Of a DNA stretch of 64,000 nucleotides, positions 3,673 through 64,000 are shown one piece after another. The position numbers and the translations under genes were made by a program. The stretch's first letter is position 1, and every line of letters starts with the position of its first letter. Under the pieces are notes generated by a model. The model saw only the letters and a list, made by a program, of their open reading frames with translations. It did not search any database and was not told where the DNA came from. Source of the DNA: Haliotis rufescens (lineage: Eukaryota); assembly GCF_023055435.1 (NCBI RefSeq), contig NW_025964112.1, positions 434,001 to 498,000 of the forward strand. Direction: 5' to 3'.

Positions 3673-4408
3673 GAACGTACTTCTGTTAAAGTACATCCAT
3701 TAGTACAGTGATCGAACTTTCTGCATCAAATACCGAAAGCTGAGATACATTATACTAAAGATACCCTTACTTGAAGAGTTATCAGAAGTACTAGTGTTTC
3801 GTTGCCCCAACTATAGATTTATCCACACTGTTTATTAACACTGTAGGACGTCCTGGTCAGAACAGGTTCCCTGCAGCTGATGTAATCCGCAGGAGGCGAT
3901 CAAATTGATCGATGATCGATGATCATGCTCAGCTCAGTAGCCTTCCCGATCAATCTGAACATTAAAATATGTAACTGATTATATAATTGCGAAAACTGTA
4001 CAGTTCTTTTTGGACAAAACTAGTGAAATAATGTAAACTATTGAGTCTACCGGGTGTGATAATATGGGGTAGATTTTCAAGGATGAAGTGTGTGGTTTGT
4101 TCTCGAGTCCACCTGTCGGAAAGCCTCCGCAGCCTCGGTCACAACAAAGGGCGAAGGCGGAGTGATACCATTGATTCGGAAGATTTGTTACACAATAATA
4201 CCATGTAAACGGTGTTCCTTATATAAGCAGAATCTCTTAACTTTTTCACAGATGACGTATTTTTTCGAAACTAACATATTGTTTTAGTTTCAAGAAAATC
4301 AGTATAACGAGCTATCTTGTGAATGAATGGATGTTCATCAATTGTCTGGTTTGTTCACATGTTTTCCTGAAGACCTGTTCTACCCCGGATCTTCACGGGT
4401 CTCGGTGG

Positions 4409-60480: not shown

Positions 60481-61395
60481 TAGATGTTATCAATGAGAAA
60501 GTTCAGCATTTCACAGTTGTTTTCTCAGTAAACTTCAGAAGTCCAACCACGCCTGATCCTCTTAATGTTTGTATGTCATAATAACTATTGCCTTGGGGTA
60601 TAACTGATCCTTGGTTTATCGGCCCTAATGCAGTCTGCACACAGTGGAACATTTCTATGATATGCGTAAGTAAGTGATACACTGTATTGATACTGAAATA
60701 CTGTTCAAAGAGGTCTAAGAAACCAATTCGCTCGTCTCAATTGAAATTCTATGGTTTCACTCATATGACAAGCATGAGATACACCAGGGTGTTCATTGAG
60801 TGTATATATGAAAAAAAACCAATCGAGTTACAAAAACAATTATGTCTTAATATAATAAATATTCAAGCAAATGTTTAAACGACACAACAGCGTACAATGG
60901 AAAAAGTGTCATATAACATTAGGTTGTTTTGAAAACCCAATGCAGTTTCTAGCCAGCCGTAAACTTTGTTACCAAAAGGCGTCCATACCCAGACTAAGAG
61001 AAGAAGTACAGTTCAAGAAATACCGACCATTATGTCGGATATTTAGAACCTTCAATTGACAAAGGAGTATCTACCTAAGTCTGTAATGGAGACAACATGA
61101 CAATATGTTCTACTTCTACTCAGATTCCAGTTCTTATTCAACAGATTCGTGATTTCTCTGGCGAAAATCATGTTATGGTTGAAACATAATGTTTCTTTAA
61201 CTTTCCACATAGTTGCCTCAGATTTACTTGTTTAAAAAGCACGTTCAGAATGGCCAGTGCATTCCTTGCTTAGCAAGAATAATACCGTGACGTCATCATA
61301 CTGGTTAAGACATCAATAAACAGACAGGCTAAGGCAAGTGATTTTATGTTCATGCTCAAGCATGATTTTATGCTGTGTTGTATACATACATCACC

Positions 61396-62054
61396 TCAAA
61401 TTTTCAAGATATCATCACAAAACTCATGGTCAGCAATACGACAGTAGAGAGACACAAAGGCTCTCAGTGACCAGTGAAGCCCTGTGGCCGGCACATACAG
61501 TGATTTGCCAAATATGGCGTTGTACATGTGGTAGCCGATACGCCAGGGAAGAAAGAAGCCATGGACCATACTCTGATCCTCCACAAACACATAGGATGAT
61601 GCAAGGTGGCCGTCAACGACAACGGTTCCTGCCAAGGTCGTCGGTGCGTATGCCCCTGTGATTACTTGTTTTCTTATGGCTGTCACTTTCACAGGAACAA
61701 AAGATCCATTCGTCATTTCCGGGCGGAACAGATAATCGCCGACCTCGACCTTTGACGCCATCCGAGTTTCTGGTGAAAGGCTCCAAACTGAAGTCACAAA
61801 AACCACGTGTTCCTTGCTCAATGTCAAGGTAGGGCCATCCTCAGTGTAAAGTATGACGTACTCTACGGGTGTGTGGTCCAGTTTGTGCATCATCAGGTGG
61901 ACGTCACTGAAGGAAATCCGGCCCTCCTCGTCCATGACCATCACTGTGTCACCGATCATCAACTCGCGCATGGTTTTCGTTCTGCCATTCTTCATCTGAA
62001 CCAATGATGATGGTGGAAAGCAACCAGCAGGCAAACTATGGTATTCTTCAAAAA
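61396..62054 (-). CDS. Hog domain exon (Hedgehog-type Hint autoprocessing domain plus sterol-recognition region); terminal exon
   Basis: Acceptor tgtttcAG (62056-62055), phase 1. Encodes G|CFPPSSLV...MRELMIGDTV...FSDV...LTLSKEHVVFV...GAYAPTTLAGTVVVDGHLASSY...HGFFLPWR...GLHW, all recognisable Hedgehog C-domain blocks. Stop TGA at 61398-61396. Confidence 0.93.
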
Positions 62055-62192
62055 CTGAAACATAATGAGCACCGGATCTAATATAGCAGCAACGTAGAGC
62101 CATAAGGAAGAGTATAACATTCAACTCCCTTTGTTCATACAGCAAAACTACCCTGTGGTCTCTTAACCAACTTTACAATATGTCCAATCATT

Positions 62193-62880
62193 ATTCTACC
62201 ATGAATTTTGAATTTACTCGATTCTGATTGGTCACTCAGAGGCTATTAAATCACAATAAACCCCCTCTGATTGAAACAGCTGGGGCCGTATCACCGAGGA
62301 AGCTAATATTCATAGAATAGTACTATTTTCAGTCATTGTCGGTAGGCATATTTAAATAATTATATCTACAATAACAGATTATCCAAATGCACAGATGCGG
62401 TTACTACAATATTCAAAGGATGTGTGGCAATACATTTCGTGCAGAAAAACACGACAGAAATCAACAAAGGGAATGTATTTACGTTTTGGAGACAACAAAG
62501 AGCTTGGAATTTTGGCGCTTTTCTATATATGACTGTGACGTCATATCTTTTGCGTCACAATGAGCGATATGACGTCATAACGTTGACGTGCGATGTAGAG
62601 CGAAAGCCTTGCAAAGCTTGCTTTGTTTTCTTTAGTGATGCCCACCTCATGCTTGCTTACCAAGTTGCCGTGCTTATATGCTTTCAATGCCTGTCATATG
62701 TTCGAGTGAAGTATTACGGTGTAAACAAACTGCTTGAGTATATACAGCACCATATTTTGTTCGGTGATTCCGTAATTCAGATCGATAACCGACTCAAAAC
62801 ACTGAACTCAACCCATGCCGCTTCACTCAGTATATTTGCTAACACCAAAGAGTTCGCGTTTTATTTAGTCAAGGTAGAAT
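62193..62880. mobile_element. Putative non-autonomous DNA element in the same intron
   Basis: Short terminal IR ATTCTACCATGA / TCAAGGTAGAAT; no coding content. Confidence 0.45.
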
Positions 62881-63051
62881 GGAGATAAACATACTGTGTT
62901 TTCAATGTAGAGCTAGGTTACCTGTAGATTTAACCGCGCTAAATTTAATATTTGAAACCTCATGCTGCGCGTTCGGTACCAAATTCAATTTAGCGGGGTT
63001 AAATCCATAGGTAACCTAGCTCTACATTGAAAACACAGTATGTTTATCTCC
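62881..63051. mobile_element. Palindromic MITE in the astacin-Hog intron
   Basis: About 65-bp arms GGAGATAAACATACTGTGTTTTCAATGTAGAGCTAGGTTACC... in inverted orientation; the outer ~43 bp are perfect. Confidence 0.85.
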
Positions 63052-63293
63052 TAATTATTATCTCCACACCATTGCAATAATACAATACGTCTTTGTTTGC
63101 CCTTGAATGACGAATTAGATATTTTAGCACCTTGTCATGTTCTTTGCTACGAACACAAACAATACAACAATTAATTCCTGATACTTTCCTCTTCTTTAGG
63201 TATTTCTTGGAGGTCACAGACAATACAGTATATCATGTAACATATGTCATACGGAGCGAGTAGGCAACTATTACATCATATAGTCACACTTAC

Positions 63294-63611
63294 AATGTAG
63301 AGCATAACTGCACCCAAGTACGGTGATGTCGTGTTGAAAGTTTTCCTTGCCGCATGGATCTCTCCATATCAAAGGGGAAAAGACAGGTTCGCCATTTTTG
63401 GAGTAGGCAAACGGTCCAATGTGGAGTAGAGAACAAATGTCGTAGTTCAAACCAGAACAGTTGAAATTAGTGAAGAAATATTTTTCTATATCAGAGGCGT
63501 TTGGTGAATTTGAAAGAAGCGGCAGATGGTGCCCTGTATAATTGTCAATGGTTAGGTTAAAAATATCCTTTGTTTCATAGAGATGATACCGATGGAAATT
63601 CACCATTGCAC
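63294..63611 (-). CDS. Astacin-like domain, C-terminal exon (Met-turn region)
   Basis: Pyrimidine-rich acceptor ttttgttggttacAG (63613-63612), phase 1, in frame with the previous exon. Encodes NF...YDICSLLHIGPFAYSKNGEP (astacin YDYxSIMHYGxxAFSxNGxP) and QHDITVLGCSY (SxxDIxxxNxxY). Donor GTAAGT at 63293 (phase 1). Confidence 0.9.
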
Positions 63612-63821
63612 CTGTAACCAACAAAATAAATAGCAAATTCTTAAATGTGTTCCACTTATTATGAGAATTATGTTTCGATTTCTGAATGTGATTTTGTGTG
63701 GTGCAGATGCACTTTAGAATGTTTCGTCATATGTTGATTAAAGACACAGAAAGAGATGCAGAAAGTCATCAGCTTTATAATTTGGTAGATTCAGTATTAA
63801 TGACTCGTGAATGTGACGTAC

Positions 63822-63997
63822 CGTCTTCCATGTTGAGAGGGTGTAGAGTTATATACTCATCCCGATCTGCCCTGTTTTGTTCATGCCACATCCCGAGTGT
63901 GTGAAGGAACAGATGCATTATCATGTCCTCACTGATGCAACCGTCGTCGACAGCAACCTCCTGCATCCCCCCTTGTCGACCGACATATGACCAGCAT
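63822..63997 (-). CDS. Astacin-like (M12A) domain exon carrying the zinc-binding motif; internal exon of an astacin-Hog gene whose 5' part lies beyond the window
   Basis: Translates CWSYVGRQGGMQEVAVDDGCISEDMIMHLFLHTLGMWHEQNRADRDEYITLHPLNMEDG, matching astacin CxSxVGR...HExxHxxGxxHEQxRxDRD with E->L. Probable acceptor CAG at 64000-63998; donor GTACGT at 63821 (phase 1). Confidence 0.93.
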
Positions 63998-64000
63998 CTG

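What the first reader, a model, noticed from the sequence alone, without database searches (positions are those of the whole stretch)
61396..63997. Astacin-Hog fusion: a metalloprotease fold in place of the Hedgehog signalling domain, in front of a complete autoprocessing/sterol-transfer module
Seen: three minus-strand ORFs that look unrelated join through canonical, phase-matched introns (GAC G|GTACGT...ACAG|GT GCA, and CAT T|GTAAGT...TTTCAG|TT TTT). The result is one frame: ...astacin...GCSYALH-FFEEYHSLPAG|CFPPSSLV..., with the G|CF site (Cys at 62022-62020) only ~11 residues after the astacin domain. The 1.2-kb second intron is mostly filled by MITE-like DNA, leaving little room for another gene start. 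Established: Hog domains cleave at G|C by N-S acyl shift and, in Hedgehog, attach cholesterol to the released N-fragment; HhN is itself a zinc-peptidase-like fold that acts as a ligand. Inference: this is a Hedgehog-related precursor that releases a possibly sterol-tethered astacin-fold protein, paralleling Hh architecture with a different Zn fold. I do not recognise this architecture among hedgehog, warthog, groundhog, quahog, hoglet or Lophohog genes, but I cannot run a search to confirm novelty.
Basis: partly seen in the sequence, partly recalled or inferred. Interest (0 to 1): 0.93.

Follow-up and report, generated by a model that had tools for sequence, protein, structure and literature searches.

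The report
Abalone astacin-like protein fused to Hog
The red abalone expresses one gene that joins an astacin-type metalloprotease domain lacking its catalytic residue to a Hedgehog-type self-cleaving (Hog) domain; the gene is real, sits unnamed in RefSeq, occurs in a second snail genus, and appears in none of the papers I could search.

Summary
The three minus-strand ORFs are exons 6 to 8 of an 8-exon gene in Haliotis rufescens (RefSeq LOC124150364, XP_048238365.1, 574 aa). That protein maps residue for residue onto the exons. Intron-skipping contigs from two runs in two studies show the predicted 63294^62054 junction, with GT..AG ends.

The protein has a signal peptide, an EGF-like module, an astacin propeptide (FEGD), an astacin-like domain and a Hog domain. 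The astacin domain keeps all three zinc histidines. It lacks the catalytic Glu (HLFLH) and the Met-turn Met and Tyr (SLLHI). The Hog domain is a Hint fold plus a sterol-recognition-like tail, and cleavage is predicted at G366|C367.

The Hint active site is not Hedgehog-like at three positions: D46H, T69S and C143S. All three are common in non-Hedgehog Hog domains. Mutating C143 blocks processing in human SHH, so self-cleavage and sterol transfer remain inferred.

The fusion also occurs in H. cracherodii and in five Gigantopelta aegis genes. Two of those keep an intact astacin active site. Trypsin-, MACPF- and AIG1-Hog proteins also exist.

No paper in the searchable library describes an astacin-Hog protein.

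Verdict: a real, new variant of the known cargo-Hog protein kind.

The parts
61396..62054 (-). Exon 8, the last coding exon. It encodes residues 356(part)-574: a 10-residue linker, the G366|C367-F368 cleavage motif (Cys at 62022-62020), the Hint module, the SRR-like tail, and the stop TGA at 61398-61396.
   Evidence: Pfam Hint 1.4e-42. Exact map of P0151 residues 357-574 to 62052-61399. RNA contigs end this exon at 62054. AF2 pLDDT is about 90-98 over 370-510. Foldseek best hits are 6TYY and 1AT0, TM 0.93, rmsd 1.4 A.
61335..61395 (-). Start of the 3' UTR (minimum extent).
   Evidence: The transcript-like contigs run past the stop, to L009 374 in X1 and to L009 335 in X9. The true 3' end is not determined, because contigs cannot show RNA ends.
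62055..63293 (-). Intron 7 (1239 nt, GT..AG, phase 1).
   Evidence: Joint 62054^63294 in X1 and X2 contigs, ends CT..AC on the + strand. Sequence read.
62193..63053 (.). Repeat insertion inside intron 7. It includes a 171-bp palindromic MITE-like element with arms at 62881-62949 and 62983-63051.
   Evidence: Absent from the X15 DNA contig, which joins L009 1192 to 2054, and covered at extreme word depth there. Inverted repeat with 69-nt arms, 94% complementary. More than 40 genomic copies at 93-98% identity.
63294..63609 (-). Exon 7. It encodes residues 250(part)-356(part), the divergent lower half of the astacin-like domain. It holds a roughly 38-residue N-glycosylation-sequon-rich insert and the degenerate Met-turn S310-L-L-H-I314.
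   Evidence: Exact map of P0151 residues 251-355. RNA joints at both ends. No Pfam hit on its own. An astacin HMM built here without the Haliotis rows aligns its 'YDylSiMhYg..fskn' segment to residues 300-327 (weak, 3.6 bits).
63610..63819 (-). Intron 6 (210 nt, GT..AG, phase 1).
   Evidence: Joint 63609^63820 in X1 and X2 contigs.
63820..63997 (-). Exon 6. It encodes residues 191(part)-250(part), the astacin upper-domain core. This includes the CWSYVGRQGG...C disulfide loop and the zinc motif H219-L-F-L-H223-T-L-G-M-W-H229-E-Q-N-R-A-D-R-D, where the catalytic Glu is replaced by Leu220.
   Evidence: Pfam Astacin 1.2e-19. PDB sequence hits to astacin, meprin and BMP-1 at 6e-19 to 3e-12. Exact map of P0151 residues 192-250. 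RNA joint 63997^C334:499109.

Best explanation
The stretch is the 3' part of a single expressed gene of Haliotis rufescens (LOC124150364). The gene has 8 coding exons over about 19.5 kb, at C334:514890-495396 on the minus strand, and encodes a 574-aa secretory precursor.

Domain order: signal peptide (1 to about 15); a six-cysteine EGF-like module (28-63); an astacin propeptide with the FEGD aspartate-switch motif (about 84-135); an astacin-fold domain (about 136-355); a 10-residue linker; and a Hog domain (Hint 367-512 plus an SRR-like helical tail 513-574).

Shown: the gene model, its expression as a spliced RNA, both domain identities, and the residue states.

Inferred mechanism: in the ER the Hint module performs an N-to-S acyl shift at Gly366|Cys367, using C367, S435 and H438. 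The thioester is then resolved by a nucleophile held by the SRR-like tail, most likely a sterol, with His412 standing in for the Hedgehog general base Asp46. This would release an N-terminal fragment that may carry a lipid on Gly366.

The released astacin-fold domain keeps its three zinc histidines and the family Glu and RxDRD. It lacks the catalytic Glu (Leu220), the Met-turn Met (Leu312) and the zinc-ligand Tyr (Ile314). It most likely binds zinc and acts as a ligand, binding protein or decoy, not as a protease. That would parallel HhN, a zinc-site peptidase-like fold used as a ligand.
For: One gene, expressed:
- Intron-skipping contigs in two runs of two studies, plus a third species label, join all exons with GT..AG ends. 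Intron depth is near zero.
- P0151 (XP_048238365.1) maps exactly on the 8 exons.
- No retrocopy was found elsewhere in the genome.

Domains:
- Pfam Hint 8.7e-42 and Astacin 1.1e-25 on P0151.
- PDB sequence hits to astacins, meprins and BMP-1, and to Drosophila Hh and human SHH C-domains.
- The Hint and tail region is modelled at pLDDT 71-98 for all but the last residues. The best fold matches are 6TYY (the Hh D46H mutant) and 1AT0, TM 0.93.

Residue states:
- C1, F2 and H72 are kept. Position 46 is His, position 69 is Ser, position 143 is Ser.
- Across 180 Hog rows, His is the commonest residue at position 46 (75 His against 67 Asp). Ser occurs at T69 in 51 rows and at C143 in 22 rows.
- SHH D46H still autoprocesses in cells (PMC12054796).
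- The tail keeps the Hedgehog-like H..H.FFLPWR and GLHWS motifs.

Constraint:
- The H. cracherodii counterpart (P0001, 572 aa) is intact. It keeps HLLFH, SLLHI, C1 and H72. Its Hint is 93% identical against 69-76% for the N-terminal domains.
- Among 17 listed X15 differences in exon 8, 10 are nonsynonymous and 7 synonymous. That gives a rough dN/dS near 0.5.

Pseudo-enzyme: HLFLH and SLLHI were read directly and aligned to astacin profiles.
Against: - Cys143 is replaced by Ser509. A 2025 study assigns it a branched-thioester role, and C143A and C143D abolish SHH processing. C143S was not reported there.
- Cleavage, the adduct and zinc binding are untested.
- The H. cracherodii protein has Ser, not Gly, at position -1.
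- The N-terminal domains differ by 24-31% between two congeneric abalones, and two tandem copies nearby are decayed. This fits fast evolution or weak constraint.
- AF2 could not model the lower astacin subdomain (pLDDT below 50 for 230-359). Its fold rests on a weak profile match only.
- The runs are labelled 'RNA?' by guess. Their RNA nature is inferred from intron skipping.
Confidence: 0.55

Rival explanations
1. Same gene and same self-cleavage at G366|C367, but without sterol transfer. The thioester is resolved by water or another small nucleophile. The Hog domain then serves only as a maturation and release device for a soluble secreted astacin-like protein.
For: The general base is His, not Asp, and C143 is Ser. 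The HWY motif of the tail reads HWS. Many Hog domains in the hit list carry cargo with no known need for a lipid anchor: trypsin, MACPF, deaminase-like and AIG1 domains.
Against: The tail after the Hint fold is present and resembles the Hedgehog SRR. It is modelled as helices at pLDDT about 71-89, and Pfam PF01079 matches to profile position 202 of 213. SHH D46H keeps autoprocessing.
Confidence: 0.2
2. The Hog domain cannot process itself, because of C143S and the non-canonical base. The protein then works as an uncleaved astacin-like/Hint fusion.
For: C143A and C143D abolish SHH processing and DTT-driven N-terminal cleavage (PMC12054796).
Against: C1, F2, the S/TxxH motif and H72 are conserved in both Haliotis species. 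The Hint part is the most conserved part of the protein at 93%. Ser or Thr occurs at position 143 in 27 of 180 natural Hog rows that all keep C1. Ser is a competent nucleophile at the equivalent +1 position of many inteins (established knowledge, not tested here).
Confidence: 0.15
3. The gene is transcribed but functionally decaying, a young lineage-specific fusion on its way to a pseudogene. Its domain architecture would then have no biological role.
For: Two neighbouring tandem copies are already broken by frameshifts and stops. The catalytic residues of the astacin domain are lost. N-domain divergence between congeners is high.
Against: The 574- and 572-codon frames over 8 exons are intact in two species. 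The splice junction is conserved in a further species label. Contig depth is high (413 and 313 in X1). The rough dN/dS in exon 8 is below 1, and the zinc histidines and Hint catalytic core are conserved.
Confidence: 0.07
4. Two separate neighbouring genes (an astacin gene ending at the 63271 stop and a Hog gene), with the join an assembly or annotation artefact.
For: None was found beyond the in-frame stop in the intron if it is read through.
Against: Independent contigs from two studies cross the junction at canonical splice sites with matching phase, and intron depth is near zero.
Confidence: 0.02

Closest known systems
Hedgehog proteins (HhN + HhC/Hog; Pfam PF01085 + PF01079)
   Same: A secretory precursor with an N-terminal cargo domain that has a zinc site on a peptidase-type fold and no proteolytic role. 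A G|CF junction. A Hint fold (TM 0.93 to Drosophila Hh-C). A C-terminal SRR-like tail with Hedgehog-like motifs.
   Different: The cargo is an astacin (M12A metzincin) fold with its own propeptide and an EGF-like module, not the Hedge domain. No PF01085 hit was found. The Hint active site has His46, Ser69 and Ser143 in place of Asp, Thr and Cys. There is no evidence of any link to Patched signalling.
Other Hog-cargo families: nematode warthog, groundhog and quahog; Lophohog of Lottia and Capitella; hoglet (Burglin 2008, PMC2362128; PMC5103448; PMC9695228)
   Same: The general design is a lineage-specific secreted N-terminal domain followed by a Hog autoprocessing domain. These families show lineage-restricted expansions in 'basal' gastropods.
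   Different: Those N-terminal domains are family-specific and are not enzyme folds. None of these papers mentions an astacin or any protease cargo.
Gigantopelta aegis astacin+Hint proteins (XP_041378606-8 of LOC121390766, and RefSeq models named 'nas-31-like', 'nas-37-like', 'dpy-31-like' and 'indian hedgehog protein-like': P0146, P0156, P0165, P0157, P0159)
   Same: The same two-domain order, astacin then Hog, in another gastropod subclass. Loss of the catalytic Glu and the Met-turn Tyr also recurs there (P0165 HVLGH/SIMHH, P0157 HALGH/SIMHN, P0146 with no motif).
   Different: Two members (P0156, P0159) keep HELGH and S(I/V)MHY and look catalytically competent. Their astacin domains sit among ShK-type gastropod astacins, and a Cys-rich spacer precedes the Hog. 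Position 46 is Lys, C143 is kept, and the tail differs (FRWFPWLL...). Their Hog domains form their own clade away from the Haliotis pair. Whether the two genera share one fusion event is unresolved (AU p = 0.57).
Astacin family metalloproteases (M12A: astacin, meprins, BMP-1/tolloid, LAST-MAM 8A28)
   Same: Pfam PF01400 above the cut-off. The CWSYVGRQGG...C loop. HxxxHxxGxxHE..R.DRD with all three zinc histidines. A propeptide with FEGD.
   Different: The catalytic Glu is Leu and the Met-turn SxMHY reads SLLHI. There is a roughly 38-residue insert in the lower subdomain, and a Hog domain at the C-terminus in place of the CUB, MAM, ShK or EGF tails.

Membership tests
Hog (Hint + adduct/sterol-recognition region) autoprocessing domain | Pfam PF01079 match above the curated cut-off, and a Hint fold | tested here: met
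   143.5 bits against a cut-off of 29.7, profile 11-202 of 213. AF2 pLDDT >=89 over 370-510. Foldseek 6TYY and 1AT0, TM 0.93, rmsd 1.4 A.
Hog (Hint + adduct/sterol-recognition region) autoprocessing domain | Nucleophilic Cys1 after a small residue (G/A/S-C-F), and the block-B TxxH motif with His72 | tested here: met
   G366-C367-F368. S435-K-E-H438, that is SxxH. Ser occurs at this position in 51 of 180 Hog rows.
Hog (Hint + adduct/sterol-recognition region) autoprocessing domain | Hedgehog-type general base Asp46 and second Cys143 | tested here: not met
   His412 and Ser509. Both are natural variants among non-Hh Hog domains: 75 rows have His at 46 and 22 have Ser at 143. SHH D46H still processes; SHH C143A and C143D do not.
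Hog (Hint + adduct/sterol-recognition region) autoprocessing domain | C-terminal sterol/adduct-recognition region | tested here: inconclusive
   A 62-residue tail with Hedgehog-like motifs (VHGFFLPWR, GLHWS), modelled as helices. Its ligand is unknown.
Hog (Hint + adduct/sterol-recognition region) autoprocessing domain | Actual self-cleavage with adduct transfer | not testable with these tools
   Needs protein expression and mass spectrometry.
Hedgehog proper | N-terminal Hedge signalling domain (PF01085) | tested here: not met
   No PF01085 hit on P0151, whereas 14 of 47 comparison proteins have it.
Astacin (peptidase family M12A) | Pfam PF01400 above the cut-off, and homology to solved astacins | tested here: met
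   90.9 bits against a cut-off of 22.5. 8A28, 3LQ0, 1AST, meprins and BMP-1 at 6e-19 to 3e-12. Only the upper subdomain is matched strongly.
Astacin (peptidase family M12A) | Zinc-binding HExxHxxGxxH with the catalytic Glu | tested here: not met
   H219-L-F-L-H223-..-G-..-H229. The three His are present and Glu is replaced by Leu. The same holds in H. cracherodii (HLLFH).
Astacin (peptidase family M12A) | Met-turn SxMHY with the zinc-ligand Tyr | tested here: not met
   S310-L-L-H-I314, aligned to the profile's SiMhY.
Astacin (peptidase family M12A) | Complete two-subdomain metzincin fold | tested here: inconclusive
   AF2 gives pLDDT 64-88 for 143-229 but below 50 for 230-359, even with 70 astacins in the alignment. 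That MAFFT alignment placed the astacins poorly against the query.
Lophohog / warthog / groundhog / quahog | The family-specific N-terminal domain | not tested
   No reference sequences of these N-domains were compared. The N-terminal region here is accounted for by astacin homology, and the papers read describe unrelated 'unique' N-domains.

The most novel reading that the evidence does not exclude
Gastropods have used the Hog module to make lipid-tethered astacin-fold proteins. In Gigantopelta these would include catalytically intact, possibly membrane-anchored metalloproteases. In Haliotis the result would be a fast-evolving, zinc-binding pseudo-protease released with a sterol on Gly366. 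That would be an independent re-run of the route by which a zinc peptidase fold on a Hog domain became the Hedgehog ligand. The paralogues form a graded natural series from active enzyme to pseudo-enzyme (HELGH, then HVLGH/HALGH/HLFLH, then no motif).
Probability: 0.3. Interest if true: 0.8.

Novelty: new variant of a known kind. Interest (0 to 1): 0.6.

Why it matters
Hog domains are the only known machinery that esterifies a protein with a sterol. Why Hedgehog's cargo is a peptidase-like zinc fold is still unexplained.

A second, unrelated zinc-peptidase fold sitting on a Hog domain gives a natural comparison set. It has active-looking and inactivated versions in related snails. These could be used to ask what Hog domains do for enzyme cargo, whether His46/Ser143 Hog variants still transfer sterols, and how a protease becomes a ligand.

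It also shows that mollusc Hog cargo is much more diverse than the literature's Hedgehog plus Lophohog picture. The same genome carries astacin and AIG1 GTPase cargo. Trypsin and MACPF cargo occur in other public data.

Tried and rejected
The spliced product was taken from the database protein P0151, and the exons were searched apart.
I therefore had no H. cracherodii or Gigantopelta DNA, no proper dN/dS, and no comparison of intron positions. The only substitute is a rough count of 10 nonsynonymous and 7 synonymous X15 differences from the partial variant list.
- Two AF2 runs modelled the Hog part well. They failed on the lower astacin subdomain, and the second alignment (A4) turned out to misplace the astacins. 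Foldseek therefore returned only Hint and intein hits.
- The Hog tree (FastTree) and the astacin trees do not place Haliotis and Gigantopelta together. The AU test does not reject one clade (p = 0.57), and the Haliotis branch is very long, so single versus repeated fusion is left open. The AU test on 105 rows did not finish.
- A three-sequence astacin HMM found no further astacin-Hog among the 150 best Hog hits. Pfam scans then found P0146.
- Ten literature searches (astacin with Hint, Hog, hedgehog or autoprocessing; Lophohog; Gigantopelta; Haliotis) gave no description of the architecture.
- Rejected: two separate genes, and a retrocopy.
- Complex prediction and the protein-atlas search were not used, because neither bears on the claim.
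Full report
**1. Observation**

- An exon ends ...GAA GAC G|GTACGT.
- The next exon starts TTACAG|GT GCA ATG and ends ...CTA CAT T|GTAAGT.
- The last exon starts TTTCAG|TT TTT GAA GAA TAC ... GCT GGT TGC TTT CCA and runs to a TGA at 61398-61396.

Searched apart, exon 6 (63822-63999) hits Pfam Astacin at 1.2e-19. Exon 8 (61399-62052) hits Pfam Hint (PF01079) at 1.4e-42. Exon 7 has no Pfam hit of its own.

**2. Where the window lies, and the whole gene**

The window is G000:C334:434001-498000 of a 1.33-Gb genome. A phmmer scan of 1.84 billion representative proteins with the Hog exon returned P0001, 572 aa and 89% identical, with the Hog at residues 361-571. A follow-up search returned P0151.

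P0151 is 'uncharacterized protein LOC124150364 [Haliotis rufescens]', XP_048238365.1, 574 aa. It lies on a contig of 65,595,138 bp, exactly the length of C334, and has PF01400 and PF01079 on record.

P0151 maps without a mismatch on eight minus-strand exons:
- C334:514890-514816
- 514499-514383
- 512785-512732
- 510107-509892
- 499215-499108
- 497996-497820, which is window 63996-63820
- 497609-497295, which is window 63609-63295
- 496052-495399, which is window 62052-61399

It contains the junction ...GCSYALHFFEEYHSLPAGCFPPSS.... The spliced sequence used throughout is this database protein.

**3. Expression and the critical junction**

Public runs hold 33-45% of the sampled words of the 3.9-kb stretch. 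That is about what exons alone would give.

Laid on L009:201-6200 (L009 position = window position minus 61000), the contigs read as follows.
- X2 record 13 (1736 nt, no mismatch) covers 427-1054 | 2294-2609 | 2820-2997 | 4109-4216, then 506 further letters.
- X1 records 1 and 3 show the same three joints.
- Each skipped part ends CT..AC on the + strand, which is GT..AG for the gene.
- Intron depth is zero to a few, against 46 to 413 on exons.

The loose end of the contigs matches a single place in the genome, C334:509893-509922. This is exon 4, 10.7 kb upstream, and it encodes the FEGD propeptide.

X9, from another species label, crosses the same large intron with seven other letters that keep the frame. 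X15 behaves as DNA and lacks L009 1193-2053. That marks the repeat block in intron 7 as an insertion.

That test therefore fails, and the join is real. One caveat: the runs are recorded as 'RNA?' by guess. Their RNA nature is inferred from precise intron skipping, and from the absence of any retrocopy in the genome.

**4. Anatomy of the protein**

From the sequence of P0151:
- A hydrophobic N-terminus, MRLLIITVVLVLVVGC. I take this as a signal peptide by inspection only, since no predictor was available.
- A six-Cys EGF-like pattern at residues 28-63.
- ILHELFEGDMKLNLGQKR..., which resembles the astacin propeptide aspartate-switch motif.
- The astacin-like domain.
- A 10-residue linker.
- G366|C367-F368 and the Hog domain.

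Astacin domain:
- Pfam PF01400 scores 90.9 bits over profile positions 38-129.
- PDB sequence matches reach 8A28, pro-astacin 3LQ0, astacin 1AST, meprins and BMP-1, at 6e-19 to 3e-12.
- The zinc motif reads H219-L-F-L-H223-T-L-G-M-W-H229-E-Q-N-R-A-D-R-D. All three histidines, the family Glu and RxDRD are present. The catalytic Glu is Leu.
- The Met-turn is therefore S-L-L-H-I, lacking both the Met and the zinc-ligand Tyr. It lies after a roughly 38-residue insert.

**5. The Hog domain**

The alignment to full-length Drosophila Hh (6TD6) gives these equivalences: C258 = C367, D303 = H412, T326 = S435, H329 = H438, C400 = S509. This confirms note s1-818335.

Across 180 Hog rows collected here:

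| Position | Residue counts |
|---|---|
| 46 | His 75, Asp 67, Lys 13 |
| 69 | Thr 116, Ser 51 |
| 143 | Cys 135, Ser 22, Thr 5 |
| -1 | Gly 87, Ser 20, Ala 8 |

The abalone set is therefore ordinary for non-Hedgehog Hog domains.

AF2 models the Hint part at pLDDT ≥89 and the tail (helices 516-522, 524-537, 550-563) at about 71-89. Foldseek ranks the Drosophila Hh D46H mutant 6TYY and 1AT0 first, at TM 0.93 and 1.4 A.

According to PMC12054796, SHH D46H still autoprocesses in cells. C143A and C143D abolish processing, and C143 is proposed to form a branched thioester. Ser509 is the main reason to doubt Hedgehog-like chemistry here.

**6. Relatives**

*Within the genome.* Upstream lie a decayed tandem copy at C334:519846-527502 (58% identical Hog, frameshifts in two exons and an in-frame stop) and fragments at 536-537.6 kb.

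*H. cracherodii.* P0001 is intact and 78% identical overall. The Hint part is 93% identical and the tail 77%. The N-terminal parts are only 69-76% identical, and the linker 40%. Position -1 is Ser.

*Other genera.* Pfam scans of the Hog hits with long N-termini found a third astacin+Hint protein, P0146 of Gigantopelta aegis. Searches seeded with it, and with an alignment of all astacin-Hog proteins, found five G. aegis genes with PF01400 and PF01079 and none in any other genus. These searches are word-limited.

Their motifs form a series:
- P0156 and P0159: HELGH with S(I/V)MHY, intact.
- P0165: HVLGH and SIMHH.
- P0157: HALGH and SIMHN.
- P0146: no zinc motif.

Haliotis belongs to Vetigastropoda and Gigantopelta to Neomphalina.

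*One fusion or two?*
- In the Hog tree the Haliotis pair groups with two metagenome fragments, P0003 and P0004, which also have Ser143 and HWS. The G. aegis Hogs form their own 14-row clade.
- In the astacin tree the Haliotis pair sits on a very long branch next to MAM-type astacins, and the G. aegis proteins sit among ShK-type gastropod astacins.
- An AU test does not reject a single clade (p = 0.57).
- One fusion or two remains open.

**7. Context**

The same hit list holds Trypsin-Hog, MACPF-Hog, LDLa-Hog, AIG1-Hog and deaminase-like-Hog proteins. The abalone genome itself carries at least five single-exon AIG1-Hog open frames.

Enzyme or effector cargo on Hog domains is thus widespread in sequence databases, although little of it is named. 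The papers I could read describe only Hedgehog, the nematode families and Lophohog for Hog cargo. They mention no protease cargo. No paper in the held library combines astacin with a Hint or Hog domain.

**8. Interpretation**

*Shown:* one expressed gene; astacin-fold and Hog domains; the residue states; conservation in a congener; a second genus with the same architecture.

*Inferred:* entry into the secretory pathway; N-to-S acyl shift at G366|C367; resolution by a sterol or other nucleophile; release of a zinc-binding but proteolytically inactive astacin-fold protein. The parallel with HhN, a zinc-site peptidase-like fold used as a ligand, is apt but is an analogy.

The rivals are cleavage without lipid, a processing-dead Hog, and functional decay. 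They are weighed in the report sections.

**9. Verdict**

It is a new variant of the known cargo-Hog kind: unnamed in RefSeq, apparently undescribed in the literature I could search, and restricted so far to two gastropod genera.

It is less singular than proposed, because the architecture is already predicted in public databases and other enzyme-Hog fusions exist. The 'complete sterol-transfer module' is not established.

Noticed in passing
G000:C445:2544510-2545799(-), 2556033-2557403(-), 2769513-2771036(+), 2788140-2789612(+), 27817511-27818872(-) (loci L028-L032): At least five single-exon open frames (430-508 codons between stops) encode an AIG1/GIMAP-type GTPase domain (PF04548, 6e-29 to 2e-53) followed directly by a Hog domain with an x|CFP site. 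A cytoplasmic-type GTPase on a Hog domain is an odd pairing. I saw it in no paper I read, and I ran no literature search on this pairing.
   Followed up: partly
G000:C556:2192919-2195087 (L024:1-2169:+): A 723-codon open frame has a Hint module at residues 509-680 and no Pfam hit in the roughly 500 residues before it. This is another unnamed Hog cargo.
   Followed up: no
G000:C334:519846-527502 and 536016-537580 (upstream of the window, loci L012, L025, L026): Tandem decayed copies of the astacin-Hog gene. The nearer one keeps HLVLH and SLMHI and a G|CV site, but has frameshifts in the exon-7 and Hog-exon homologues and an in-frame stop. The farther one survives only as fragments.
   Followed up: partly
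window 62193-63053: An 861-bp repeat block in intron 7 is absent from the DNA contig of another abalone label (run X15). It includes a 171-bp palindromic MITE (arms 62881-62949 and 62983-63051) with more than 40 copies at 93-98% identity across the genome.
   Followed up: yes
proteins P0079, P0087, P0141, P0121, P0140, P0044, P0014, P0112, P0090 (public collections, organisms mostly unnamed): Trypsin-Hog, MACPF-Hog, LDLa-Hog, SNAD/APOBEC-like-Hog and AIG1-Hog architectures occur among the 150 best Hog matches. Hog domains appear to carry many enzyme and effector cargos.
   Followed up: partly
P0151 residues 1-20 (exon 1, C334:514890-514816, outside the window): The hydrophobic leader ends ...VVG|CRPQ in H. 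rufescens and ...IAG|CRPQ in H. cracherodii. If the signal peptidase cuts after Gly15, the mature N-terminus is a Cys, as in Hedgehog, where that Cys is palmitoylated. This is pure inference and was not tested.
   Followed up: no
proteins P0003 and P0004 (JGI metagenome contigs of about 1.1 kb): These are the closest Hog relatives of the Haliotis pair (33-37% identity; SH-like support 97 for the four-row group). They share Ser143 and the HWS tail motif but keep Asp46. Their N-terminal cargo is unknown because the contigs are short.
   Followed up: no
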